A DNA stretch of 64,000 nt, from positions 151,396 to 215,395 of IMG/VR virus record IMGVR_UViG_3300018004_000004; one strand, written 5' to 3'. The stretch's first letter is position 1. Each line of letters starts with the position of its first letter. Both the position numbers and the translations under genes were made by a program. Under the pieces are notes generated by a model. That model was not told the origin of the DNA, made no database searches, and was given only the letters and a program-made list of their open reading frames with translations. Below, piece after piece: positions 1 through 63,688 of the stretch.

Positions 1-873
1 GTTTCCAAGACAGTTCTTGACATAGTAGAAGACTACGTAACCACTCGAACTGTTGAGCGCTGAGCCGCCCGGAACAAGAGTGTAGTTGGCATTGTTTCCA
101 GCCGTGTCGGTGATGGACGTGATGGGATTCGAGGTGAAATAACCATAGAAAGCGCAACCCAGAACCAACAAACTTCCCGGGGTCAAGTTCATTCCCGCTG
201 TCGTAAGAGGAGTTACAGAACCACCAGCTTGCCCTCCAAAGTCCGTATTCACAACCGCGAGATTATTTACTGGTGAAGCGTTGTAAAAAGAAATCCCGAA
301 CTGTACCCAAGTTGCAGAACCGCTTAATGTGGTGCTAACGGTTGTACTTGAAACGGCAGACGTGACATCGAGATGGGCTCCATACGACGTGTTCGTCTGC
401 CCAAAGCTTCCATCATCAATCATCGGGGTCGAGCCAACAAACGGAAGCGAGCCAGTTGTAGCGTTGGTGCCGTTGCCTACGAAGTTGATTATCGCTTCGT
501 CAGCATACGCAGTAGCAAAACTCGGAACTGACGGAGCAGCCGATGTTCCTGTTGCGGTTACATACGCATCTAACGTATTGGCACCAGCGATATCCCATGC
601 CATGATTCCGCAATACGTAGGCGTTTGTCCGCCGAGAGAAATGACATTAGATGCATTACCTACGCAGTTCACGCAGTAGAAAACTCGCGAATACCAACTG
701 CCAATATGGACAGAGGGCCCAGCCGGAACATAGCTGTTCCCAGCGGTGTCAACGATATAAGGAGTTTGAGCGTTGTAGTTATTCACGCCCACAACAATGA
801 CGTGTCCGGCTGACTGGCTATAAGCAGGAGTACTGTAAGTGCCTCCACCGATGAATGTTGTAGTCGAAGGCAT
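1..873 (-). CDS. Beta-rich putative virion/tail protein with tandem repeated domain, truncated by window edge (absent from ORF track)
   Basis: ATG at 873 (MPSTTTFIGGG...) and the frame I read stays open to base 1. Internal repeat DTAGNSY...VFYCVNCVGN / DTAGNN...VFYYVKNCLGN. Lies directly downstream of the collagen gene. Confidence 0.75.
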   Translation of the reverse strand, partial: MPSTTTFIGGGTYSTPAYSQSAGHVIVVGVNNYNAQTPYIVDTAGNSYVPAGPSVHIGSWYSRVFYCVNCVGNASNVISLGGQTPTYCGIMAWDIAGANTLDAYVTATGTSAAPSVPSFATAYADEAIINFVGNGTNATTGSLPFVGSTPMIDDGSFGQTNTSYGAHLDVTSAVSSTTVSTTLSGSATWVQFGISFYNASPVNNLAVVNTDFGGQAGGSVTPLTTAGMNLTPGSLLVLGCAFYGYFTSNPITSITDTAGNNANYTLVPGGSALNSSSGYVVFYYVKNCLGN

Positions 874-11551: not shown

Positions 11552-12555
11552 AGGTTGTCATGAAATATAGTTTGATGTTGGCCTTCTTGCTGTGTGCCCA
11601 GGCTAATGCCAAGGAGCCACCTGAGTTGGTTATCAAGTCGGCGCCGACGCATGCCAAGAAGCACCACAGCATGAAGCCAGCGTACTTGTTGAATCATCCC
11701 AATGATTATGACAAGTGCATATTCACCCCAGAGCAGATGAAGGGCTCTGGATACAACACACTCAACCACATAGAGCAAGTGAAAGGAGCATGAGCATGCC
11801 AGTGCTTGAACTCTTCAAGACTCTTCGTCCTATCTCTGATGGAACGAAGGATGGGAAGTGGCATCATCATCCTTGTAGCCGGCCGAAGACCAGCTGCAAT
11901 CATCCGACAATGCCATGTGGCAAAGGCGCTGCGTTTGTCGTAGTCTGGACCAATGACTACGAAGCAGTGCTGTGCACAGACTGCGCTATTGAGCTCTTGC
12001 AACTGCAAGAACGTCAATGGCAGAAAGAGGCGTAATCGTGTTCATGAGAACTCAGTTTGAACTCAGCATCATGTCTTGGACTGATCTGCGTACGCATTAC
12101 AATACGTGTGCCAAGTCCAAGGCTTTGACGGAAGCCACAGGCGGGAAGCTCACGGAAGAGGAGCAAGCGTATTTCGATTACCTCTTCTATCTGGTGCAGG
12201 TGCACTGTGAGAATCCCAACAATCGCAAGCCGTTGTCTGAAGTGCTCAAGCATTACAAGCAGTAGAAAGGACAGTCATGATCCCCAATGGTGTTGTGCTG
12301 TGGGTGGCGCCGAATGGCACCACAATGATGAATCGTCTCGGCTACAAATCTGTATCCTATTTGACCTGGCTCATCGACGAAGAAGGTGATCGGGTCAATG
12401 GGTATTCGATGCCGGAAGCCGATGCGTTGGCAGCGATTGAGTTGATCACGGAGTACAATGCACTTCCGTGCAACGATTGCTGCCACATCAAGGCCTATAT
12501 CAAGTAGAAGTGCAGCAGGCATGGCGCTGTATGAGTCCATGCACAAGGAGTAGTG

Positions 12556-15465
12556 ATGAATCAACGTTACCACGTTGTATTCGAAGGAGAGAATAAAGTA
12601 ACAACTCGCCGTCCTTGGAAGGGACGCGGTGTTGAGCTTTATTCCTCCAGCGGTGATCCAGCAAGAGGCATACCAGCGATGTTTGGTTCTCATGAAGTGC
12701 GTCAGTTTCTTGAGAACCTCGGGCCATTCATCGTAGCATCGATGGACAATCCCGCAGTCGCAGCTCAGATCCTTGATGAAGGGTATGTGGTAACAGACCC
12801 TGATTCAGGTGCGAAGAGCAAGTGGTATGTTGGTGGTTATTTCGTCCGCGACGACGGTGCAGTGTATATCATGCTGCCCGAAGTCACAACCGATGCCCAG
12901 TTTCGTTCTAAGCTGGGTTTGCATATTGACCTAAACGATCAGTGGGGCAATAGCTTCAAGGTAGGTAAGTATCTGAAGCGCTTGTTCTCACATCATCGTA
13001 AGTTCATGCAAGGTGAAGTCGTGAAGGAGCTCGACAATGTCGTGCTCGTACGGCTGAAGAGTGGCAAAGTGATCAGTGTGAAATATGCTGATCATGGCGC
13101 GCTCACAGATGGCATGAACCTCGTGTCAACACATTGCATGAAGCTCATGGGTCTTAACAAGACCATGGGTGCTGGCCTTAGGATCACGGCGTTGAGTCCT
13201 AAGGGATTCAGCAAAGGCCATGCGATTGTACTGCCGGAGCTGCAGCATGATGTCGTGCTGTTCAACTCTAAGAAGCTGCTGACAGGTGATCAGTTCACCT
13301 TCGGCATGGATTGGTTGCATAGCGGTGCAGTATTCACTGATATGCAATCAGTCATTAACTTCAGGTTCGCAAACACCAGCTTCTTGTCGCAGTGGGACAA
13401 GGAGTTTCTGGAGACAGTAGTCGATGCTATTGAAGATGAGGATAAGCTGAAGCGTATGCTTCAGTTCTATCATGTGGAGTTCCACAAACAGCGGGACGAT
13501 GACGGAGACATGCAGTTCATTCAGAAGGACAAAGAGTGGGCACTGTTGCGTGCATTGCGCGGTGGTGTGAAGATTCAAGATCACCCAGCGCTTGTGCGTA
13601 AGGTGTTCCATCTATTTGCCGACAAGGTTCGCAACTGCGAAACCAACATTCGTGTGCCTATACCTGAGACAGCAGGTGGTGCACGTTATGCTTTGGTTGA
13701 TCCTACCATCTTCGATATGTGGGGTGATCCCACTCTCGAAGGTACTCTGAAGAATGACCAGGTATATTGCGCTGGCGATGTTGGCAGCGTGGTATTCCAC
13801 AGGCAGCCGAATGCGCATCGTGACGAGCATTATATCGCGCGCGCAACAAGCAATGAATATCTGAAAGCTATGGACACTGGATGTTTCATGTTCATATCCA
13901 AGGATATCATCAAGCCAAGCCTGGCCAAGCTAGGTGGTGGTGATCAGGATGATCGCCTTGTGTATTACAAGGACCCAGCAGTTGTGGAACACTTCAGGCA
14001 ACTGGAGCTGGATCCATATCCCACAGTGCCTCTGGTTGAGAAGCCAGAGCCACCAAAGCGTTCCAATGCATTTGCACACAGACTGCATCGCACACCGATC
14101 TATGATCGGACTCAGCTGCTGATGATGTTGGATCAGATGAAGAACCAGAGTCTGCATATTGGCTTCGTTGTTAATGCTGGTATGCATGACACTGTGCTGA
14201 CGGATAATAGGGCAGAGATCACCAGGAATCTGGAGGCTCTGCCAAAGACACTGAAGAATCAATCTGCCTATGAATGGTTCACAACCAAGTATCAGAACTA
14301 TACGCTGCGTGAACCAATGTCCAGGTTGGAGTTGGTCATTGACGCGGTCAAGAAGACTGGTGCTGATCTGGCTGGTATTCGTGACCAGGTGAAGAAGTTC
14401 AATGACACATTCGAAGTCGTGGCTGAGTTCATGACGCGCGGCGGTAGGTATGATGGGAGAATCCCATTGTCTCGCCGCGGTGACAGCCATCCAGTTATGG
14501 TCCGTACCATTGTGGATGATAAGCTGGATGAACTCAAGCGACTGAGGCAAGACCTGGAAGATATCATCACTGATATCTCTTGGCAAATGATACCGCCAGT
14601 GGCGGAGGAAATACTGACATGCCCGTGCTATGAAGAGCAGGCGACTCAGCTGGCGTATGCCATGCGTCAGGAGTATCGCAATCAGTGGGCCAATCTGAGT
14701 AAGGAGATTGAGCGCACTGGTGACAAGGCAGAAGTAAAGAAGACCATAGATGCGTACATGAAGATCGACAAGGCGATGTATGAGCGCTTCGCTCCACATC
14801 CGCTGATCATCGATGCCATGGTCAAGCTGTATATCATGGTGTATGAATCCAGGAAGCCAGAGGCGCCAAGGGACGAAGATGGTCGTCCTATTAAGTTTGG
14901 TGATGGTATCCTCTGGGGCCCGAGAATGTCCGGCCTGACCCTGCGCATGATGGAGCGCGCAGGGCTGGCTGGGCGGTTCACTGAGATCACATTCGAGGAT
15001 GAAGTCAAACACCTCCGTAAGGAGAGCCTCGATGTGGTTATTGATCAGGGTATTGTACGCCAGGAGGGTACCAATATCTTGGTGGGTACCATTGACCCAA
15101 TGGCCGATGGTGCTAAGAAGGCAGAGAAAGGATGGGTGAAGGTGGCAGCAAGGGATGCATATCCCTATGAACCAGAACCCAGGTACATGATCCTGCGAGT
15201 AGTTAATGGCATGCATGCCAAGGGTGCGTCTCCAGTTGAGATCGCACAGTGGCGTGATCATGCTAACGAACAGGTCGAACTAGTTCCTTTCATCTGGACG
15301 AACCCGGAGAATGAAGAAGAACACGCAGTTCGCGTGGTGCTCAATGGCCAGGATTATGGCTATATCGATCGCAAGGACAACACGTATGTCACTGAAAAGA
15401 CTATGGGTTGGCTATTGCCGGGCACAACACCAAAGACCATGGGAGTATTGGTCTATGAAAGGTAG
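12556..15465 (+). CDS. Single-chain two-barrel RNA polymerase (YonO / cellular RdRP-like), probably DNA-dependent
   Basis: Ordered family motifs TDGMNLVS, LR...KGH, GSVVFHRQPNAH, LGGGDQDDRLVYYKD, IGFVVN, VIDAVKKTG; AAGGAG RBS. Confidence 0.85.
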   Translation: MNQRYHVVFEGENKVTTRRPWKGRGVELYSSSGDPARGIPAMFGSHEVRQFLENLGPFIVASMDNPAVAAQILDEGYVVTDPDSGAKSKWYVGGYFVRDDGAVYIMLPEVTTDAQFRSKLGLHIDLNDQWGNSFKVGKYLKRLFSHHRKFMQGEVVKELDNVVLVRLKSGKVISVKYADHGALTDGMNLVSTHCMKLMGLNKTMGAGLRITALSPKGFSKGHAIVLPELQHDVVLFNSKKLLTGDQFTFGMDWLHSGAVFTDMQSVINFRFANTSFLSQWDKEFLETVVDAIEDEDKLKRMLQFYHVEFHKQRDDDGDMQFIQKDKEWALLRALRGGVKIQDHPALVRKVFHLFADKVRNCETNIRVPIPETAGGARYALVDPTIFDMWGDPTLEGTLKNDQVYCAGDVGSVVFHRQPNAHRDEHYIARATSNEYLKAMDTGCFMFISKDIIKPSLAKLGGGDQDDRLVYYKDPAVVEHFRQLELDPYPTVPLVEKPEPPKRSNAFAHRLHRTPIYDRTQLLMMLDQMKNQSLHIGFVVNAGMHDTVLTDNRAEITRNLEALPKTLKNQSAYEWFTTKYQNYTLREPMSRLELVIDAVKKTGADLAGIRDQVKKFNDTFEVVAEFMTRGGRYDGRIPLSRRGDSHPVMVRTIVDDKLDELKRLRQDLEDIITDISWQMIPPVAEEILTCPCYEEQATQLAYAMRQEYRNQWANLSKEIERTGDKAEVKKTIDAYMKIDKAMYERFAPHPLIIDAMVKLYIMVYESRKPEAPRDEDGRPIKFGDGILWGPRMSGLTLRMMERAGLAGRFTEITFEDEVKHLRKESLDVVIDQGIVRQEGTNILVGTIDPMADGAKKAEKGWVKVAARDAYPYEPEPRYMILRVVNGMHAKGASPVEIAQWRDHANEQVELVPFIWTNPENEEEHAVRVVLNGQDYGYIDRKDNTYVTEKTMGWLLPGTTPKTMGVLVYER

Positions 15466-20000: not shown

Positions 20001-21880
20001 AACAAACAGTCCAAAGGAAAGGAGACGTCATGAAGTCTTTGCTTACTTTCATCCTGGCATTCATCGCAACAGTTCTGTCTTGCATGCTTGCCATTCGACT
20101 GTGCCAACTGCAGGATGCTTTCTTGCCTGCTTTCCGCGTGCGCCGGCAGATTCATGGAATGAGAGCCGGTCGACTCGCAGCTGACACAGAAGCAAAGCTA
20201 CGCGCTATATTCATCAACAAGCCCAAGCGCGTGGCGTAGTACAAATCTGCATTCGAAAGGACAACATGAGTACCATCAATCGCATCGTGCTCGGAGTAGC
20301 TGGCCTGATCTGCCTGATCATGGGTGTCTACTCCTGTGTCGCGATCACGAAGGGAGACAATCAGTGGCTCAAACATTCACTCCAACAGCTGCATCCGCTG
20401 CAGCTGCTGGGTTCGGTTTTTGGGCGTTGGTCTGGGGCATTGCGCTCAAGCTGGACACGATCGCAGGCCTCTTCGGCTTCAGGGACCGTGGTCTAAGCCG
20501 GCGCATTCGCCTCTGGATCAACGAGAACAAGGGATTGAGCCTGTGCATTACTGAGGTCACCAACTTCAGTATCCATGGGATTACCAATCCCGATGCCGTC
20601 ACATTTGCCATTGGCGGCACTCTATTCAACTTCTTGTTCGTGTTCGTATTCAATCCAATCATGCTCATGATTGAGGGCAAGAAACGACCGATCAAGAATA
20701 ACAGGGTGGCTGCGTAGTACATGTCAGCCACCCTTTCCCAAGGTGACTGACATGAATATGACTGAAGCCATCATCATGTTTGCCATTCAGCACAGAGCCT
20801 ATGCTACACCAAAGGGCTCGTACAACATGTGCTGTACGTCTGTACAAGAGTTCACTGACTTCCTGTCATACCATGGCGTGAAAGGCGTGGCCTTGGAGTA
20901 CTCATTCGATGTGATGAGCAGAAACAAGGATGAGTATATCAATCCAAATCCACGCGCGTACAGATGGAACAAGAAGAAAGCCGAATACCACATGATTGTG
21001 GATCTCGGCTTCTGTTATTTGGATTGGACCGCCAGGCAGTATTGTGCCATCCTGCCATTTCCCTACATCATTCCGAAAAGAAAGGAGGATGCTAATGAAG
21101 TGGAGCGTTTATTGGACAGCACTTGTAGGCGCGCTATTCGGCGCGCTCTATTTGAAGAACAACCACAATCACAAGGATAAGACTGTTCAATGGAATCTGG
21201 GCAAGTCCATCATTGAATGCGTCCTGCTTGTGTTGGCTGTGGCATTCATGCCAGCAGTCATCGCTATCTATGGATCCATGTGGATCACCAAGGGCATTAA
21301 ACGCCCTGGTTTCAAGATCTTAGTGGGATTCAGCGTTGGCACAGCCCTGATGATTATCATGGGCTGGGCGCTGGAAGTCCTGGTGCTGATAGGTGTATTC
21401 GGCATCGACATTCTGTCCGATGATTTCCTCGGCTTCATGGCCGAGCGGAAACAGCAAAAGAGAGGAGTCGTAGCAGCATGAAGAACTGGCTCAAAGAGAA
21501 CTGGACTTATGTTGCATTGGGCACATTCGCGGCGCTAGTTGTTGGCGCCATTGTCGTGGCCAAGGTGACTCACGTTCCGCTGAATGATGCTGACATGGAA
21601 GCACTGAAGAACTTCCAGTCTTCATTGGCTGAGAACACAGCCAAGCATGGCTTCAACAATAGCATGGCTATTGTGGAGCAGGGCAAGCATCAGGTCCTGG
21701 TAACCGCGGACAAGATCAAAGAACTGTGACACTCGAACAGTTCGAGGGGATCCTTGCTTTGTTCTTTGTCCTGTATTTGCTCTTGCGCGCCAGGCGCAAA
21801 GAGTTAGGACTCAAGGATCACCTAGATCCAATGCCATGGATTAGGAAGCACATCTTCCCGGAGTGAGAAAGGAGGTCATC

Positions 21881-23494
21881 ATGGACAAGAAGGAAATGGC
21901 TGATGAACTGATCTATGCTATATTCCAAACCCTAAAGAATCATGCGATTAACTTCTTGCTTGATGGCCTTGTTCTCAAACCGTTATCCAAATCGATTGCT
22001 GCTAAGATGCAGCCCAGCCCGTATAAGGGAGCGAGCGCATTGTTATCTGCTCGCATGATGTCCAAGAAGACTGTTGATGGTGCCATCCTTGAGGGCCCAA
22101 CAGAGGCAGGCTATGCCAAGTATGCTATTCGCAAGGGCATGCCAGGCCCAGGACAGAAGAGATTGGCAATCGAGAATGAACCGCACACCGTTGATGATTT
22201 TGATGGTGTGATTGAGGAAGGCTATGGCAAAGGCAAGAAAGAACTCATCTACACAGGCCAAGCCGCCATCAAAGTTGGAGAAGAAAGATTCCTCGGCAAA
22301 GTCAACATTCATAAGCACACTGCTGACAAAGCCGGGCTCCACTGGGATTTTGTTGCGGAAGGCGTTAAGCCTGGGACACAGCAGTTCGAAGTTAACATCC
22401 CTACTGGCCGATGCAAAGGACGCTATGCCTTTGTTACCACGGCCAAAGGCATGCTCATTACCCGCCTCAAGGACAGGAGCGTCCTCATCGAGAAGCCGAC
22501 ATTCCATCTCAAAGGCGAAGACCTTCTGAGAGAGCTCGACAAGAATCCCAGTGGCACAATAGCAGAGTGGAAACCAGATGGTTCACTCGCGAATGTGGCC
22601 ATTAGTGGGCAACGGGCTATCTTTAGAAGTCATCGGGATACAGGCGAACCTTACTACGATAAACTGCCAGGACTAGAAGATCTGAGCAACCGTAGTGGAT
22701 TCCTATCCAATCGCCTGTTCTTCCCGGGACCCAACCTGGATGGAACGGTGTTACGAGGGGAACTGTTCCATCCAGAAGGGGCTGCTCGAGTTGGTGGTAT
22801 TCTGAATAGCATGCCGGACAAGGCTATTCAGTTCCAGACAGAGCATGGCCCAGTGACATTCATTGTATGGGACGAGCTGAAGCACAATGGCAGAGATATA
22901 TCCAAGCTGCCTTACGCAGAGAGGAGAGCGATCTATGTCGCGGACGTCAATAGCATTCGACACTTCAACGGGCTTTGGTCGTACGTGCCAGCTCGTACCC
23001 GAGCTTTCCTTTCGTTTTACAGGGATATCGTCAACGATCCTCGTGGCCTGCCCTACGCCGAAGGTATTGTCCTCAAGGATGGAAGTAGCCCAGCTGGTGA
23101 ACCATGGCGCAAGGTCAAGTTCCGCGACACCGTGGATGTCAAGATTGTTGATGTTCTTGAGGGAACTGGTAAGTACGAAGGATCGGCCGGCAAGCTTCTG
23201 GTTCAGACAGCAGGAGGAGGACGCGGAGAAGTTGGTTCTTTCGCCATGCCTGATTGGCAGCGAAAGCAGATCCTGATTGATAAGGATCTGGTCAAGGGGC
23301 AGGTGATTGAGATCTATGCCCAAGAGATAACCAAGGCTGGTGCTCCGCGCGCTGGTGTCATGCTGCGATTCCATCCAAGCAAGAGCGAGTATGCATTCGA
23401 TCTCGAATCGAAAGCTATTGCTGATGTGGATGGCAGGACACCAAATGAAGTGAAGTATGCAATGAAGACAGCCGCAGGCTGGAGGAAGAAATGA
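21881..23494 (+). CDS. ATP-dependent DNA ligase with N-terminal rearranged LigD 3'-phosphoesterase-like domain
   Basis: EWKPDG (I), LRGEL (III), FIVWD (IIIa), EGIVLKD (IV), WRKVK (V), OB-domain GTGKYEG. PE-like KRLAIENEPH..FDGVIEEGYGKG and HKH...GLHWDF. Confidence 0.9.
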   Translation: MDKKEMADELIYAIFQTLKNHAINFLLDGLVLKPLSKSIAAKMQPSPYKGASALLSARMMSKKTVDGAILEGPTEAGYAKYAIRKGMPGPGQKRLAIENEPHTVDDFDGVIEEGYGKGKKELIYTGQAAIKVGEERFLGKVNIHKHTADKAGLHWDFVAEGVKPGTQQFEVNIPTGRCKGRYAFVTTAKGMLITRLKDRSVLIEKPTFHLKGEDLLRELDKNPSGTIAEWKPDGSLANVAISGQRAIFRSHRDTGEPYYDKLPGLEDLSNRSGFLSNRLFFPGPNLDGTVLRGELFHPEGAARVGGILNSMPDKAIQFQTEHGPVTFIVWDELKHNGRDISKLPYAERRAIYVADVNSIRHFNGLWSYVPARTRAFLSFYRDIVNDPRGLPYAEGIVLKDGSSPAGEPWRKVKFRDTVDVKIVDVLEGTGKYEGSAGKLLVQTAGGGRGEVGSFAMPDWQRKQILIDKDLVKGQVIEIYAQEITKAGAPRAGVMLRFHPSKSEYAFDLESKAIADVDGRTPNEVKYAMKTAAGWRKK

Positions 23495-27900: not shown

Positions 27901-28346
27901 CTTGTCTGGGCAGGAGTTTAACCGTTCTCCCTGCTCGGCAAAAATAGCTGGGGTAGATGCCGACTAGCTCTACCCCAGTTATACTAATCAGGGATAATCC
28001 CCTGACAATATGGAGCTTATATGCCATGCGAACGCTGTGGCAATGCATCGCATTGCACCACAGAGCATGTGAAGGAAACAGCCGTGCACGTCGTATTACG
28101 AGACGGCACCCACGATTTTGACCCTGATAGCTTTGTCTCCAACGTCCATTCGTTAGATAATAAGACGTTGTATGACAACTGCATCGAAATGCAGAAGGCG
28201 TTTGCCAGGGTAGTTACGACATCATGGCCATCGGTCATGCGTTGCGCATGGATGGTCGGGGTTTATGAAAGGGAGGCCAAACACAGGCAGCAGAGATGGA
28301 TCGTAAAGTAGCTGCCAGGATCACATCTAAACTTAAGGAGAACCGC

Positions 28347-28880
28347 ATGCAGAAACTACTTCGGGTAGTAGTATTCTTACTACTCGCCGTAAGCCTGCTG
28401 TGGACGCCCCCGACGTTCGCAGCACAATACCACCATGCCAGTCACGTAAAACTAGTTTACTGTGACTTTCATGTTTGCCTGGAGAAGCCCCACTATATAG
28501 GGAAGGCTTCTTTCTATGGCAAACATTACTGGCAAGGTCGCAAGATGGCGAACGGTAATCGTTTTGATTATCGCAAGCCGTCTATTGCTACCTGGGGTAT
28601 TCCCCTAGGTACCATGGTCCGTGTGACAAACCTACGCAATGGCAAGTCCATTGTGGTTGAGGTCACTGACCGGGGCCCTGCTCATAGCCTTCATAGAGTC
28701 GCAGACCTGTCTCAGGCTGCGGCCGAAGCCCTGGACTACGTCAAAGATGGAATGACGACGGTGATGATCCAGGTAGTTGTGCCAGTAGACACTGAGGTAG
28801 CAGTACTTGACACTACCTTGGTGGAATCACCTGAACTTGTGAGCCTCGAGCCCCCTATTGTGGTGGCTGGAAAGGACTAG
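28347..28880 (+). CDS. RlpA-like (DPBB) lytic transglycosylase with signal peptide
   Basis: GKASFYG...MANGNRFD...PLGTMVRVTNLRNGKSIVVEVTDRGP...DLSQAAA. Confidence 0.9.
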   Translation: MQKLLRVVVFLLLAVSLLWTPPTFAAQYHHASHVKLVYCDFHVCLEKPHYIGKASFYGKHYWQGRKMANGNRFDYRKPSIATWGIPLGTMVRVTNLRNGKSIVVEVTDRGPAHSLHRVADLSQAAAEALDYVKDGMTTVMIQVVVPVDTEVAVLDTTLVESPELVSLEPPIVVAGKD

Positions 28881-29308: not shown

Positions 29309-29692
29309 GTGTCCAAACCACTCATAACAATACCAGCTGGATCCAGAGTTCTGTTGATAGAGGATTCTGGTGCTCGTATTGAATGGTTTCGTGAGCGTAT
29401 TACTGAACGGCTGGATGTCGCTTGGACTCCCGAGATGGCACTAGAGCGCGCCGGACACTGTCTGGAATACGATTTGATCTTCTTGGATCACGATGCCAAG
29501 TGGAATGATCCTCGTGTTACATTCTACGAGGCAGCATTGAGAATGGAACAACTTGAGTACCCAGGCACTGTGGTGATTCATTCACTCAATACGCCTGGCG
29601 CCAAGCGAATGGAGTATGCTTTGGGTCGGAATGCCAAGGTTGTACTATTGCGGTATGGCACATTCGAAATCGAGGTGAAGCATGGCTCTTGA
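29309..29692 (+). CDS. Cyclic-phosphate-processing receiver-like domain protein
   Basis: LLIED...IFLDHD...VVIHSLNTPGAKRM. Confidence 0.7.
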   Translation: MSKPLITIPAGSRVLLIEDSGARIEWFRERITERLDVAWTPEMALERAGHCLEYDLIFLDHDAKWNDPRVTFYEAALRMEQLEYPGTVVIHSLNTPGAKRMEYALGRNAKVVLLRYGTFEIEVKHGS

Positions 29693-30380
29693 GGAAGTGA
29701 TTCAGAGCCTATGGGTAAGCGGTAAACTCTCACCTATGGAGCACCTTTCAATAAGCTCCTACTTAAGGCATGGACATGAGTTCCATCTGTACACGTACGA
29801 GCCTGTTGATAACATCCCTCCTGGCACTATCGTAAAGGATGCGAATAGCATCATACCTTTGGATATGTACGATCCAAAGGACTTTACTTCTCTCGCTCTG
29901 TTCTCCGATTTCTTCCGTTACAAGCTGTTGCTTGATTGTGGTGGTTGGTGGTCAGATACAGACGCAGTGTGCATGCACACGTTTGACTTTGACTCACCTT
30001 ATGTATTCTCGTCCGAGGATACTAAGGAAGATGGTTGGCAAGTCAACGGAGGCACCATCAAAGCACCAAAGAACAGCGACGTCATGGCTTATTGCTGGCG
30101 GCGTTGTTTGGATACAGATCCACACACGGAACTGTGGGGAGTGTGCGGTCCTACATTGATCGCACAAGCCGTGAAGAAGATGTGGTTAGTCAGGTATGTG
30201 CAAGCTCCACATATCTTCTGTTCAGTGCCATGGTGGATGGTGTGGGACTTCAAGGACTTGGCATTCAAACCTGATCCGCTGGCATATGCCGTCCACTTGT
30301 GGAATGCAATGTGGATCCAGGAACAGATGGATAAGAGTTTGATACCAACAAGTCTGAAGGAGGCAGCGTATGGCTCTTGA
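29682..30380 (+). CDS. GT32-like DXD glycosyltransferase
   Basis: IQSLW...SYLRHGHEFHLY...FSDFFRYKLL...GGWWSDTD...HLWN. Confidence 0.85.
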   Translation: MALEEVIQSLWVSGKLSPMEHLSISSYLRHGHEFHLYTYEPVDNIPPGTIVKDANSIIPLDMYDPKDFTSLALFSDFFRYKLLLDCGGWWSDTDAVCMHTFDFDSPYVFSSEDTKEDGWQVNGGTIKAPKNSDVMAYCWRRCLDTDPHTELWGVCGPTLIAQAVKKMWLVRYVQAPHIFCSVPWWMVWDFKDLAFKPDPLAYAVHLWNAMWIQEQMDKSLIPTSLKEAAYGS

Positions 30381-36421: not shown

Positions 36422-37402
36422 ATGACCGACGAACTTGTCAGCAATCAGTTTATACCTTGGCCTCTTGTCAGCAATCAGTTTATACCTTGGCCTCTTGGAA
36501 AAGAGAAGCCAAAGAGAAAGTGCAAGATTATCGTTAATATAGGTCTGCCTGGCTGCGGGAAGACTACGGAAACCCGTGAGCTCATGAAGACCGACGGTAA
36601 TCTGATGAGGGTTAATCGAGATGATCTTCGGAATATGCTCTTCTCCCGTTGGAAGGGGCGTAAGGAGTCGGTTGTCACCGACCTCGAGGCACAGGCTATC
36701 AGAGCTGCTATCCATTATGGATACGACATCATTATCGATGACACCAACCTCAATCCGGGTACCTTGGCGAAGTGGAAGAATCTGGCCAACGAGCTCGGAG
36801 TTCCTCTGGTGGAGAAAAGCTTCGACGTTCCGATCGAGGTGTGCATCGAAAGGGATGTACAGAGAACTGGCCGAGCTCATGTGGGACGTGGAGTTATAGA
36901 GAATATGGCCCTGACTTATGGGCTTATTCCTAAACTCGATCCTGAACAGAAGGTCGTGATCTTTGACATGGATGGCACCATGGCAGATCAGACCGTTCGC
37001 AGGCAGTACATTGAAGGCGAGCACAAGGATTACGATCTGTACTACAACTATGTGAGTATCCTGGGTGATACTCCTGTTGGAGTAGTCATTGACTGGTGCA
37101 ATGCCTGCTATGCAGATGGGCTGATAGTCCTTGTCGTTTCCGGCCGGCCGGCAGATAGGGCAAGCGATGCTACAGTTGACTGGCTTCGTATGTATGGCGT
37201 CAACTATCATCGCCTCTTCATGCGCCCCGGAGGGGACTTCCGAGATGATGACATCATCAAACAGGAGATCCTGGACAAGATCCTGAAGTGGATCAACAAG
37301 GATCAGATCCTGTTTTCCGTGGACGACCGCCCACGAATCATTCGTATGTGGCAACTGAATGGTATTACATGCTATGATGTTGGGAAGGGAGTCGAGTTCT
37401 GA
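36422..37402 (+). CDS. pseT: Polynucleotide 5'-kinase/3'-phosphatase (T4 PseT-like)
   Basis: P-loop GLPGCGKTT, RVNRDDLR, DDTN; HAD DMDGT, VSGR, DDR. Confidence 0.93.
   Translation: MTDELVSNQFIPWPLVSNQFIPWPLGKEKPKRKCKIIVNIGLPGCGKTTETRELMKTDGNLMRVNRDDLRNMLFSRWKGRKESVVTDLEAQAIRAAIHYGYDIIIDDTNLNPGTLAKWKNLANELGVPLVEKSFDVPIEVCIERDVQRTGRAHVGRGVIENMALTYGLIPKLDPEQKVVIFDMDGTMADQTVRRQYIEGEHKDYDLYYNYVSILGDTPVGVVIDWCNACYADGLIVLVVSGRPADRASDATVDWLRMYGVNYHRLFMRPGGDFRDDDIIKQEILDKILKWINKDQILFSVDDRPRIIRMWQLNGITCYDVGKGVEF
36434..36497 (+). repeat. Perfect 30-bp tandem duplication in the PNKP N-terminus
   Basis: cttgtcagcaatcagtttataccttggcct x2 plus cttg. Confidence 0.95.
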
Positions 37403-62169: not shown

Positions 62170-62595
62170 TTGAAAGAACATATCACGGCAGCAGTAGAAG
62201 CATTGAAAGACTTCCGTCCCCGCGGCAACTACGTTGTCTGTGTCCCCTGGGATCTAGATGCAATGAAGATCCAGAAGGCAGAGAGCCAGGCGTTTAGCAT
62301 GGACGAAGCTGCCTATGTGCGAGAGGAACGTCTTCGTTTTGCAGTACTTAAGGTGGGCCCAGGTGATCATCAGGAAGGTACACTGCTTCCTATTGACCTT
62401 CATCCCGGCGATATTATTGTGACGAATGTCACATCTCAATGTTTGCGTGAGGACTTTGAACAACCTCGGTTCATCATCAACGGACAACCTATTTTCTTGT
62501 TTGATGGCCGCATGATTGATCATGCCTCCGGAGATATCTTCGGAGTAGTTGGACACACTGCCCTCACAGAAGCGGAGGAAAAGTTCGGTGTCTGA
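62170..62595 (+). CDS. GroES-like co-chaperonin
   Basis: FRPRGNYVV...AVLKVGPG...LLPIDLHPGDII...DIFGVV. Confidence 0.7.
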   Translation: MKEHITAAVEALKDFRPRGNYVVCVPWDLDAMKIQKAESQAFSMDEAAYVREERLRFAVLKVGPGDHQEGTLLPIDLHPGDIIVTNVTSQCLREDFEQPRFIINGQPIFLFDGRMIDHASGDIFGVVGHTALTEAEEKFGV

Positions 62596-63688
62596 TGAGA
62601 AGCATGTCGCCTTATTTTACAAAGAGGGGACGTCTGACAAAGAGTATCATGTTCATCTTGTCCCCAAAGGAACGGGATACGTTGTTCGCATCGAATACGG
62701 GCGACGCGGTAGTTCGCTCACGAGTTCAGACAAAACTCCTAGCCCGGTGGATCTGGACACGGCGAACGCCATATTCGATAAACAAGTGCACGAGAAAAAA
62801 CTCAAGGGGTATTCTGAGGGTGCTGGTCAGGCGCCTTATGTGGGTAGTGACAAGGAGGATAAGATCTCAGGCTACCTGCCTCAGCTCTTGAACCCTATCG
62901 ATGATGCACTGGTGGAGTATTACTTCAAGAATAAGACATATTGTCTCCAAGAGAAGAAGGATGGCAAAAGGATTATACTCAAACGCACGGGTAAAACCGT
63001 TGAAGCCATCAATCGTAAGGGCCTTTATGTCGGTTTCGCTGCGAGCATTGAACAAGCAGCGCTTGCTCTACAGGGAGATTATGTAATCGATGGAGAGATG
63101 ATCGGAGAGGTCTACTATGCCTTCGATATTCTGGCCGCCAGCAAGAAAGGATCGGCCGCCAAGGACACTACTCAGCTGCCTTATGAGGAGCGATACGATA
63201 TTCTATCTGAGCTACTCGAGGATGCTGATGCAGCTATTCAAGTTGTGCCAGCCGCCTTCACTGAAGCTAAGAAGCGTATCCTCTTCAACAAGCTTAAGGA
63301 CCAAGGAGTAGAGGGTGTTGTCTTCAAAGATATCACCGCTCTCTATGTGCCTGGGCGTCCAGCCAGCAAGGGACCCCAGACTAAGTACAAGTTCACTCAG
63401 ACTTGCACTTGCCAGGTCACAGCGGTCAATGAGAAAGGAAAGCGAAGTGTCTATATCGCGTGTCTCGACGGCACTACATTGGTGGAAGTGGGAAAGGTTA
63501 CTATTCTACCGAACTTCCCTGTCCCTAAAGTTGGGACCCTTGTGGAGGTCAAGTATCTTTATAGGCACGTCCACGGTGCCTTGTACCAACCGATATATCT
63601 TGGCGAAAGGGACGACATCGACCAAGCTGATCAAGTTTCTACGCTTAAAATCAAAGAAGGAGTTGACCTAGATGACGATGAGAGCTAG
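62588..63688 (+). CDS. WGR domain plus ATP-dependent DNA ligase
   Basis: EGTSDKEY...YGRRGS...EKKLKGY; QEKKDG, IDGE, YAFDIL, EGVVFK, KYKF, OB with EVKY...LYQP. Confidence 0.88.
   Translation: MSDEKHVALFYKEGTSDKEYHVHLVPKGTGYVVRIEYGRRGSSLTSSDKTPSPVDLDTANAIFDKQVHEKKLKGYSEGAGQAPYVGSDKEDKISGYLPQLLNPIDDALVEYYFKNKTYCLQEKKDGKRIILKRTGKTVEAINRKGLYVGFAASIEQAALALQGDYVIDGEMIGEVYYAFDILAASKKGSAAKDTTQLPYEERYDILSELLEDADAAIQVVPAAFTEAKKRILFNKLKDQGVEGVVFKDITALYVPGRPASKGPQTKYKFTQTCTCQVTAVNEKGKRSVYIACLDGTTLVEVGKVTILPNFPVPKVGTLVEVKYLYRHVHGALYQPIYLGERDDIDQADQVSTLKIKEGVDLDDDES

What the first reader, a model, noticed from the sequence alone, without database searches (positions are those of the whole stretch)
22100..22480. 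LigD phosphoesterase domain with its motif order rearranged, fused to a DNA ligase
Established: LigD PE domains run H-x(5-7)-H-[YW]-D, then W-A-x-x-K-G...KRLA..E.H...FEG.I..G.YG.G, then L.G.y.L. Seen here: YAIRKGMPGPGQKRLAIENEPH..FDGVIEEGYGKG comes first, then IHKHTADKAGLHWDF, then CKGRYAFVTT. The metal-binding hairpin has moved from the front to the middle, which is a segment transposition rather than a simple circular permutation. The Tyr normally four residues after the E.H motif is also absent. Inference: a topologically rewired 3'-end-healing domain giving a heal-and-seal enzyme in the early region.
Basis: partly seen in the sequence, partly recalled or inferred. Interest (0 to 1): 0.6.

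Follow-up and report, generated by a model that had tools for sequence, protein, structure and literature searches.

The report
Rewired LigD phosphoesterase fused to ligase
A jumbo phage DNA ligase carries a DNA-end-cleaning domain whose metal-binding hairpin has moved from the front to the middle of the chain while apparently keeping its place in the 3D fold, which is a rare kind of protein rearrangement in an otherwise familiar heal-and-seal enzyme.

Summary
Window 21881..23494 (+) encodes a 537-aa protein (543 from an upstream GTG; numbering below is from the GTG). It consists of an N-terminal helical arm, a LigD-type 3'-phosphoesterase (PE) beta-barrel (res ~68-205) and an ATP-dependent DNA ligase (KxDG at K237, OB_2 domain). 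In the PE part the order is main block (res 83-138: KYAxxKG, KRLA, ExExH, FDG, YGKG), then the His/His/Asp hairpin (141-166), then the tail (174-202). Canonical PEs run hairpin, main block, tail. The order is conserved in more than 140 homologues, many on 200-370 kb viral contigs, so it is not an artefact. With the phage-family profile, 102 of 104 canonical LigD_N proteins match out of order, with the hairpin upstream of the main block. A hairpin-only HMM scores >=8 bits in 100/104 real proteins and 0/1040 shuffled ones. AF2 models match all solved PE structures (Z 7.1-9.3), skipping their N-terminal hairpin. A fragment model of hairpin plus tail aligns from canonical beta1 through beta8. Metal ligands and the phosphate-binding His are invariant. 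The essential beta2 Arg is Val and the Tyr is deleted; an invariant Lys86 replaces the Ser that the Arg contacts. Activity is inferred only. Verdict: a new variant of a known kind.

The parts
21869..21875 (+). Shine-Dalgarno AAGGAGG, 5 nt upstream of the likely true start ATG at 21881
   Evidence: The closest homologues (P0002, P0003; 537 aa) begin at the equivalent Met.
21881..23494 (+). Gene for the PE-like/ATP-dependent DNA ligase fusion: 537 aa from the ATG, or 543 aa (P0001) from the GTG at 21863. Residue numbers in this report use P0001 numbering.
21887..22060 (+). N-terminal helical arm (helices 9-48 and 57-66). It is variable in sequence and its role is unknown. It replaces the N-terminal hairpin and N-peptide of canonical PE.
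   Evidence: AF2 DSSP; alignment A1
22109..22276 (+). PE main block, residues 83-138, equivalent to canonical beta3, beta4, the FEG mini-strand, the YGxG loop and beta5. Invariant residues are K86, K91, N105, H108 (phosphate-binding His), Y121, K126 and K137; E104 is conserved in 59 of 60.
   Evidence: Pfam and PDB sequence matches; VIA alignments; column table
22283..22360 (+). Transposed metal-binding beta-hairpin, residues 141-166 (strands 141-154 and 158-165). H150, H152, H160 and D162 are invariant. Val164 stands where canonical PE has the essential Arg.
22361..22381 (+). Loop 167-173 (EGVKPGT-like; G167 and T172 are at least 90% conserved). It is inferred to cross back from the beta2 slot to the beta6 slot.
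   Evidence: DSSP; alignment. The crossing is an inference from canonical topology.
22382..22468 (+). PE tail, residues 174-202, equivalent to canonical beta6-beta8 (strands 174-179, 186-193, 196-202). E176, G186 and R187 are invariant.
   Evidence: VIA ranges end at beta8 of every PE structure. The tail stretch matches downstream of the main block in 39 of 104 canonical proteins.
22541..23092 (+). Ligase nucleotidyltransferase domain, residues ~227-410. Motif I is K237-x-D-G (adenylated Lys at 22571-22573). Also present are RSHR 255-258, E300, E400-G401, and K417/K419 just beyond.
23159..23371 (+). Ligase OB domain of the OB_2 (T7/LigE/phage) type, residues 433-503
   Evidence: Pfam PF14743, 30.3 bits against a cutoff of 28; PDB ligase hits 6ras, 9fzx, 6gdr
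23450..23491 (+). Conserved C-terminal tail (Y-x-[ML]-K-[ST]-[AS]-x-G-W-[RK]) of unknown role
   Evidence: alignment A1

Best explanation
The gene encodes a two-function phage enzyme. Its N-terminal catalytic module is a genuine relative of the LigD 3'-phosphoesterase (PE) beta-barrel. In it, the beta1-beta2 hairpin that carries the Mn ligands (His, His, Asp) has been transposed from the N-terminus into the beta5-beta6 connection. In the canonical barrel beta5 is the neighbour of beta1. A two-residue turn after beta5' therefore lets the relocated hairpin fill the same two slots, between beta5' and beta3'. An eight-residue loop then crosses back to beta6'. This is a non-cyclic permutation that keeps the 3D fold. 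The active site is retained in part. H152, H160 and D162 would bind the metal and H108 the scissile phosphate. The canonical beta2 Arg is replaced by Val, and its neighbour on beta3 (Ser in canonical PEs) is an invariant Lys86 that probably supplies the missing positive charge. The Tyr is lost. The module most likely removes 3'-phosphates (or 3'-terminal ribonucleotides) from nicks or breaks in a Mn-dependent reaction, and the attached ATP-dependent ligase (T7/LigE-like OB_2 type) then seals them. Shown here: homology, order, conservation, fold and the fusion. Inferred: the exact 3D placement of the triad, the Lys-for-Arg substitution, enzymatic activity and biological role.
For: The order is conserved in more than 140 homologues and 27 representatives at 50% clustering, all fused to a ligase. 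The phage profile matches canonical LigD_N proteins out of order in 102 of 104 cases, with the hairpin a median of 7 residues upstream of the main block. The hairpin-only HMM scores >=8 bits in 100/104 real and 0/1040 shuffled sequences. 10 of 10 tested targets are Pfam LigD_N above cutoff, with profile position 1 at the hairpin hit. The AF2 model has pLDDT >95 over residues 90-200. All five PE entries are the top structural hits, at Z 7.1-9.3 against <=4.9 for unrelated chains. 3p4h aligns 90 residues at 1.9 A and 30% identity, model 81-202 on chain 23-117, starting after the canonical hairpin. The fragment model of residues 140-211 has the two PE representatives as its top two of 48,161 chains, spanning chain 1-117 (3p4h; 57 residues, 3.0 A) and 34-170 (3n9b). 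Canonical strand order puts beta5 next to beta1 (PMC3300020). Arg19 contacts Ser28 and Gln7 in CkoPE (PMC3082917). Column table: H152/H160/D162/H108 are conserved in both groups; position 164 is V/A/C/L here and R in 85/88 canonical; position 86 is K in 60/60 here and S in 78/84 canonical. Ligase motifs are intact.
Against: No coordinates were available, so triad-to-H108/K86 distances and an order-independent superposition were not computed. The fragment-model matches have low Z (3.2-3.4). Covariation at Neff 55 did not discriminate between topologies. Two of the six residues essential in PaePE/CkoPE are missing; R19A leaves only 1.6% product in CkoPE. Pfam LigD_N is below cutoff, and the second half alone has no significant Pfam or PDB sequence match. 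The 104 canonical proteins are the best-scoring subset of about 330, so hairpin scores are somewhat selected. The phage already has a Pnkp with a HAD 3'-phosphatase, so a second 3'-phosphatase is not obviously needed.
Confidence: 0.6

Rival explanations
1. The PE-derived barrel has become a non-catalytic, metal-stabilised DNA-end-binding module. It stands in for the DNA-binding domain that minimal T7/LigE-type ligases lack, positioning the ligase at nicks without healing them.
For: The essential Arg and the Tyr are missing. New invariant lysines (K86, K126, K137) would suit DNA backbone binding. The ligase is of the minimal two-domain type. The genome has a separate Pnkp for 3'-phosphate removal.
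Against: All three metal ligands and the phosphate-binding His are invariant across a family only 40-60% identical overall, which is more than a scaffold needs. The correlated Arg-to-Val and Ser-to-Lys change looks like maintenance of a cationic group at the active site.
Confidence: 0.2
2. The rewired domain is an active metallo-phosphoesterase with a changed substrate, for example 2',3'-cyclic phosphate or RNA 3' ends, 3'-blocking adducts left by a host defence nuclease, or removal of ribonucleotide primers.
For: The active-site periphery is remodelled: Lys86, His150, Asn105, Asn148, Asp111/112 and Lys126 are family-specific and invariant or nearly so. CkoPE itself prefers single-stranded 3'-ribonucleotide substrates (PMC3258152 abstract). 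The genome also holds a second ligase with RNA_ligase similarity and a Pnkp.
Against: Nothing in the sequence points to a specific alternative substrate, and the fused ligase has DNA-ligase-type motifs and OB fold.
Confidence: 0.15
3. The apparent rearrangement is an assembly or frameshift artefact, or a chance motif resemblance.
For: None found.
Against: The same order appears in more than 140 proteins from ENA, JGI, NCBI and Logan assemblies, including 88-91% identical copies from other samples. The ORF is uninterrupted. The model is high-confidence. The shuffled control gave 0/1040.
Confidence: 0.01

Closest known systems
LigD 3'-phosphoesterase (PE) domain, Pfam LigD_N PF13298. Solved structures: P. 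aeruginosa 3n9b/3n9d/2lj6, Ca. Korarchaeum 3p4h, M. barkeri 3p43, M. paludicola 5dmp.
   Same: Same beta-barrel fold (Z 7.1-9.3; 90-100 residues at 1.9-3.1 A; 22-32% identity). Same metal ligands (His, His, Asp), phosphate-binding His, PKG Lys and YGxG loop. The hairpin, main block and tail are each recognisably homologous.
   Different: The beta1-beta2 hairpin lies between beta5 and beta6 instead of at the N-terminus. The essential beta2 Arg is Val and the Tyr is deleted. Lys86, Lys126 and Asn105 are invariant (Glu104 in 59 of 60) where canonical PEs have Ser, Val, Gln/Thr and variable residues. A helical arm replaces the N-peptide. The Pfam score is below cutoff.
Canonical-order PE plus OB_2-type ATP-dependent ligase fusions of 450-560 aa from metagenomes (e.g. 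P0157, P0194, P0177), found on phage-like contigs
   Same: Same two-module architecture, size and ligase type. P0157 is colinear with P0001 over 304 residues (26% identity), shares HTVD and GYGKGK features, and is the best canonical hit to the phage profile.
   Different: They keep the hairpin at the N-terminus and, as aligned for P0157, have a gap where the rewired family carries it. They score above the Pfam LigD_N cutoff.
Bacterial DNA ligase D (NHEJ; PE-LIG-POL with Ku)
   Same: A 3'-end-healing PE module fused N-terminal to an ATP-dependent ligase in one polypeptide, as in Pseudomonas LigD.
   Different: There is no primase-polymerase domain and no Ku gene in the 215 kb genome. The ligase OB domain is the phage/LigE type (PF14743), not the DNA_ligase_A_C type (PF04679) found in the LigD cluster of the Atlas search. 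The fusion was probably assembled independently.
T4-type polynucleotide kinase/3'-phosphatase (Pnkp) working with a ligase
   Same: The functional logic is heal, then seal.
   Different: The fold is unrelated (P-loop kinase plus HAD phosphatase). The proteins are separate, and this phage encodes one as well (window 36422..37402).

Membership tests
LigD_N / PE superfamily | Pfam PF13298 match above the gathering score | tested here: not met
   22.5 bits against a cutoff of 31.1. Only profile positions 22-77 of 107 align colinearly.
LigD_N / PE superfamily | Eight-stranded antiparallel PE beta-barrel fold | tested here: met
   All five PE entries are the top hits, at Z 7.1-9.3 against <=4.9 for the next chains. 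Foldseek probability for 3p4h is 1.00.
LigD_N / PE superfamily | Metal-binding His, His, Asp (Pae H42/H48/D50; Cko H9/H15/D17) | tested here: met
   H152, H160 and D162 are invariant in 60/60. They align to H/H/D in 107, 106 and 107 of 107 canonical proteins. Hairpin HMM control: 100/104 real against 0/1040 shuffled.
LigD_N / PE superfamily | Phosphate-binding Arg on beta2 (Pae R52; Cko R19) | tested here: not met
   Position 164 is V/A/C/L in 60/60 and R in 85/88 canonical proteins. R19A leaves 1.6% product.
LigD_N / PE superfamily | Phosphate-binding His after beta4 (Pae H84; Cko H51) | tested here: met
   H108 is invariant and aligned to the canonical His.
LigD_N / PE superfamily | Tyr four residues after that His (Pae Y88; Cko Y55) | tested here: not met
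   A two-residue deletion removes the column. Y55A retains 23% conversion in CkoPE.
LigD_N / PE superfamily | Sequential strand order beta1 to beta8 | tested here: not met
   The order here is beta3-4-5, then the hairpin (beta1-2), then beta6-8. Profile stretches are out of order in 102 of 104 canonical proteins, supported by the structural alignments.
LigD_N / PE superfamily | [quoted passage not shown] | not testable with these tools
   Requires a biochemical assay.
ATP-dependent DNA ligase (covalent nucleotidyltransferase superfamily) | Motif I KxDG and motifs III, IV and V; OB domain | tested here: met
   K237/D239/G240, G401 and K417/K419 are invariant and E300 is at least 90% conserved in alignment A1; E400 is invariant in A1. 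PF14743 scores 30.3 against a cutoff of 28. PHROG 114 scores 1.8e-23. PF01068 is weak at 17.7 against 26.2.
Bacterial LigD (NHEJ ligase) | Primase-polymerase (POL) domain and a Ku partner | tested here: not met
   No POL-type Pfam hit in the protein. No Ku match in the complete 215 kb genome.

The most novel reading that the evidence does not exclude
This is a natural, functional example of a non-cyclic permutation, a beta-hairpin transposition, in an enzyme. The catalytic hairpin was re-inserted next to its old neighbour strand, the active site was rebuilt with a Lys on beta3 taking over from the lost beta2 Arg, and the resulting PE-ligase is used by a clade of uncultured jumbo phages to heal and seal 3'-blocked DNA breaks, perhaps those inflicted by host defence nucleases. 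Canonical-order phage PE-ligases would be the ancestral state.
Probability: 0.4. Interest if true: 0.7.

Novelty: new variant of a known kind. Interest (0 to 1): 0.62.

Why it matters
Non-cyclic permutations that keep a fold and an active site are rare and hard to detect. Sequence tools, Pfam included, see only half of this domain. Here both states exist in nature in the same architecture: canonical-order and rewired PE-ligase fusions. That gives a clean system for asking how a catalytic hairpin can be moved and how the active site compensates, as in the Arg-to-Val change paired with Ser-to-Lys. It also shows that LigD-type 3'-end healing, so far studied in bacterial and archaeal NHEJ, is fused to replicative-type ligases in uncultured phages. 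Neither form was detected among 50,697 GenBank phage records. Such single-chain heal-and-seal enzymes could also be useful reagents.

Tried and rejected
(1) Direct order-independent superposition and triad-to-H108 distances were not possible, because model coordinates are not exposed to the Python box.
(2) Covariation (mean-field DCA with APC) on 115 sequences had Neff 55. It recovered the three hairpins and ranked Y84-A165 (beta3' with strand Y) 6th, but strand-pair enrichment did not separate the alternative topologies. Result: inconclusive.
(3) The second half alone (residues 140-211) gave no LigD_N or PE hit against Pfam (60 members scanned) or against PDB sequences. The homology appeared only with the exhaustive profile search and a local re-analysis.
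(4) Internal duplication, first half against second half by hhalign, gave probability 0.2% and was rejected.
(5) A plain-meander topology (C-X-Y-D as beta5-8, with the E-F hairpin filling the beta1/2 slots) was rejected. VIA ranges end with strand F on beta8 in all five structures, with 90 residues aligned at 30% identity, and the fragment model spans beta1 to beta8.
(6) Stand-alone rewired PE domains: only short proteins on 0.9-3.2 kb contigs were found. The one examined, P0127, is a split copy of the fusion gene.
(7) Intermediates with two hairpins: none among the best 150 representatives.
(9) PF13298 on the whole genome found nothing at the tool's first-look sensitivity.
(10) Gene neighbourhoods here and in two distant homologues showed no conserved annotated partner.
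(11) Complex prediction was not used, since no protein-protein binding claim is made.
Full report
**What is there**

The window is the last 64 kb of a 215,395-bp viral record rated complete, so this is a jumbo phage. The finding lies in ORF 21863..23494 (+), 543 aa from a GTG, stored as P0001. A strong Shine-Dalgarno (AAGGAGG, 21869-21875) sits 5 nt before the ATG at 21881, and the closest homologues are 537 aa. The real start is therefore probably residue 7. I keep P0001 numbering throughout.

Family scans show the following:
- A DNA_ligase_OB_2 domain at 433-503, above cutoff.
- A weak DNA_ligase_A_M match at 227-408.
- PHROG 114 'ATP-dependent DNA ligase' at E 1.8e-23.
- A sub-threshold LigD_N match that covers only residues 86-137, which is profile positions 22-77 of 107.
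- The archaeal PE structure 3p4h matches the same stretch.

**The arrangement is a conserved family trait**

A word-index search with residues 1-225 found 143 proteins, nearly all about 535 aa. Several lie on contigs of 200-370 kb, from ENA, JGI, NCBI and Logan assemblies, and include 88-91% identical copies from other samples. Of the 120 listed, 118 carry the H-x-H...H-[YWF]-D motif; wherever my KYA..KG.P pattern was also found, that block lies about 64 residues upstream.

In alignments of 30 and 60 diverse members (40-60% identity), the following are invariant: D72, G73, K86, K91, P94, N105, H108, G115, I117, G120, Y121, G124, K126, K137, H150, H152, G158, H160, D162, E176, G186, R187, K211 and P212. 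In the 30-sequence alignment the ligase residues K237/D239/G240, R255-S-H-R258, E400/G401 and K417/K419 are invariant as well, and E300 is at least 90% conserved. An assembly artefact or a chance motif is excluded. The extended motif occurs once in 128,000 six-frame codons of the window.

**Fold**

An AF2 model of residues 1-232 (60-sequence alignment) has mean pLDDT 86, and above 95 over residues 90-200. Its elements are:
- helices 9-48 and 57-66
- strands 74-77, 86-89, 99-104, 115-117 and 124-138
- strand 141-154 (bearing H150 and H152)
- strand 158-165 (bearing H160 and D162)
- strands 174-179, 186-193 and 196-202

Foldseek's best hit is 3p4h (probability 1.00). With VIA-align the five solved PE entries are the top five hits:

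| Entry | Z | rmsd / aligned / identity | Model range | Chain range |
|---|---|---|---|---|
| 3p4h | 9.3 | 1.9 A / 90 / 30% | 81-202 | 23-117 |
| 3p43 | 8.9 | 2.2 A / 93 / 32% | 81-204 | 50-151 |
| 3n9b | 7.6 | 2.7 A / 96 / 24% | 82-206 | 57-164 |
| 5dmp | 7.5 | 3.1 A / 100 / 29% | 82-207 | 55-171 |
| 3n9d | 7.1 | 2.8 A / 96 / 22% | 82-206 | 57-164 |

Unrelated chains score 4.9 or less. Every alignment begins just after the canonical metal hairpin and ends on the last canonical strand. About 32 model residues are left unaligned, which is the length of the 141-173 hairpin plus loop. The ESM Atlas search returned the same viral family and canonical LigD_N/LigD clusters.

**Where the hairpin sits**

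The NMR paper on PaePE gives the strands as beta1 35-42, beta2 48-55, beta3 58-63, beta4 76-84, beta5 105-115, helix 119-125, beta6 127-134, beta7 138-145 and beta8 155-159. It names the faces beta1-2-3-5, beta3-4-7-8 and beta6-7-8 (PMC3300020). From this I infer the barrel order 1-2-3-4-8-7-6-5-(1), which makes beta5 the neighbour of beta1.

In the phage protein beta5' (124-138) is followed by a two-residue turn, strand X (141-154), a three-residue turn and strand Y (158-165). If strands 174-202 occupy the beta6-8 slots, as the VIA ranges indicate (3n9b 155-159 falls on model 197-201), only the beta1 and beta2 slots are left for X and Y.

I considered a plain-meander alternative, with X-Y-D as beta6-8 and the last hairpin filling beta2/beta1. 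To test it I folded only residues 140-211 (pLDDT 82, same five strands). Among 48,161 representative chains, the two best matches were the two PE representatives:
- 3p4h: Z 3.2, 57 residues at 3.0 A, fragment 6-63 on chain 1-117.
- 3n9b: Z 3.4, 66 residues, chain 34-170.

The fragment therefore aligns sequentially from canonical beta1 through beta8, skipping beta3-5. The transposition model predicts exactly this, and the meander model does not. The Z values are low, and I could not compute distances because coordinates are not exposed. The 3D placement is thus well supported but indirect. Covariation at Neff 55 was inconclusive.

**Sequence-level proof of the rearrangement**

An exhaustive HMMER search of 1.84 billion cluster representatives with a domain-only profile (A4) gave 361 hits. 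Of these, 27 at E <= 1e-30 cover the whole profile and are the rewired family. There is then a gap, followed by hundreds of proteins that match profile positions ~16-75 in two or three stretches.

I re-ran HMMER locally on the best 145:
- In 102 of 104 canonical-type proteins, the hairpin segment of the phage profile (positions ~78-99, P0001 145-166) matches upstream of the main block. The median gap is 7 residues and the median score 11.9 bits.
- 88 of those matched pieces contain H-x(4-8)-H-[YWF]-D.
- The tail segment matches downstream in 39.
- A hairpin-only HMM scores >=8 bits in 100 of 104 real sequences (median 20.9) and in 0 of 1,040 shuffled ones (maximum 2.5).

Ten of ten tested targets are Pfam LigD_N members above cutoff, and Pfam position 1 coincides with the hairpin hit. 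So canonical PEs run hairpin, main block, tail, and this family runs main block, hairpin, tail. That is a segment transposition, not a circular permutation.

There is no internal-duplication signal, and no protein with two hairpins was seen.

One caveat applies. The 104 are the top-scoring subset of canonical hits. PaePE and MbaPE themselves gave only marginal out-of-order hairpin scores.

**Nearest relatives and direction**

Among the canonical-order hits are 22 representatives of 400-600 aa with an N-terminal PE. Eight of the nine such proteins scanned against Pfam also show a DNA_ligase_A_M match, weak or below cutoff in several, and two of them (P0194, P0177) show the same OB_2-type domain, above cutoff only in P0194; one of the ten proteins in that scan, P0165, instead carries DNA polymerase beta domains. 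The two whose contigs I examined lie on phage-like contigs.

P0157 aligns colinearly with P0001 over 304 residues at 26% identity. It has a gap exactly where the phage protein carries the hairpin. The canonical order is spread over bacteria and archaea and many architectures, while the rewired order is confined to one ligase-fused viral family. The rewired state is therefore most parsimoniously the derived one. This is an inference; no rooted tree was made.

Neither form was detected in 50,697 GenBank phage records, where only the ligase parts match. I found no description of a phage PE-ligase or of a permuted PE in the searchable literature. The apparent stand-alone hits are fragments, and the one examined, P0127, is a split fusion gene.

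**Active site and likely mechanism**

In CkoPE, His9, His15 and Asp17 bind Mn. Arg19 and His51 bind phosphate, and Tyr55 makes a water-bridged contact. Arg19 also hydrogen-bonds Gln7 (beta1) and Ser28 (beta3). H9A, H15A, D17A and H51A leave <1% substrate conversion and R19A 1.6% product, while Y55A keeps 23% (PMC3082917).

Column statistics:

| P0001 position | Rewired family (60) | Canonical proteins |
|---|---|---|
| H152 / H160 / D162 / H108 / Y121 / K91 | invariant | conserved |
| H150 | H in 60/60 | Q or H |
| 164 (canonical Arg) | V/A/C/L, never Arg | R in 85/88 |
| 86 (canonical Ser) | K in 60/60 | S in 78/84 |
| K126, N105 (E104 in 59/60) | invariant, family-specific | V, Q/T, variable |

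The Tyr column is deleted. The paired Arg-to-Val and Ser-to-Lys change on two strands that touch in the canonical structure has two implications. It is further indirect support for strand Y lying next to beta3'. It also suggests that Lys86 supplies the phosphate-binding charge.

My best reading, at confidence about 0.6, is an active Mn-dependent 3'-phosphoesterase that hands a clean 3'-OH to the fused ligase. The alternatives are a non-catalytic metal-stabilised DNA-end-binding module (about 0.2) and an esterase with altered substrate (about 0.15).

**Context**

The gene follows a long run of small co-oriented unannotated ORFs, here and in two distant homologues on contigs of 211 and 219 kb. 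No annotated partner is conserved. 'Early region' is plausible but untested.

The genome has no Ku and no NAD-ligase. It does have a T4-type Pnkp (window 36422..37402) and a second ligase with a WGR domain (62549..63688).

**Verdict**

This is a new variant of a known kind: a hairpin-transposed LigD-type PE domain fused to a phage-type ATP-dependent ligase, in a clade of uncultured jumbo phages. Its enzymatic function is inferred, not shown.

Noticed in passing
window 36422..37402 (+): A T4-type polynucleotide kinase/3'-phosphatase (AAA_33 kinase plus HAD_PNKP phosphatase; PHROG 505 at E 2.8e-65). The phage therefore has a second, unrelated 3'-end-healing activity.
   Followed up: partly
window 62549..63688 (+): A second ATP-dependent ligase (379 aa) with an N-terminal WGR domain. 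It has DNA_ligase_A_M at 50 bits and also matches RNA_ligase at 32 bits. Its role relative to the PE-ligase is unknown.
   Followed up: partly
window 23450..23491 (+), residues 530-543 of P0001: A conserved C-terminal tail, Y-x-[ML]-K-[ST]-[AS]-x-G-W-[RK], is present in most full-length family members. It could be a docking motif, for a clamp or another partner, but this was not tested.
   Followed up: no
window 21887..22060 (+), residues 9-66: The long N-terminal helix (9-48) and short helix (57-66) precede the barrel in all family members. Their sequence is variable and their function unknown. An invariant D72-G73 and a short strand (74-77) follow.
   Followed up: no
P0157, P0194, P0177 and about 20 other representatives; loci L012-L014: Canonical-order LigD_N proteins of 400-600 aa, most of those scanned also carrying an ATP-dependent ligase domain (OB_2 type seen in two), occur on phage-like metagenomic contigs (one with an Amidase_2 endolysin nearby). 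They have no match to their PE part in GenBank phage records.
   Followed up: partly
P0225 (313 aa) and P0165 (507 aa): Canonical LigD_N domains occur in other fusions: NUDIX plus PE, and PE plus DNA polymerase beta palm/thumb.
   Followed up: no
window 28296..28880 (+) and 29682..30380 (+): A DPBB_1 lytic-transglycosylase-like protein (PHROG 'lipoprotein precursor') and a weak DXD glycosyltransferase-like protein lie downstream of the ligase.
   Followed up: no
locus L011, 361..1802: One homologue of the fusion gene is split into three overlapping ORFs (179, 161 and 152 aa). This is either a frameshifted pseudogene or sequencing errors.
   Followed up: partly
window 12553..15465 (+): A 970-aa ORF with no Pfam or PHROG match at E 1e-3.
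   Followed up: no
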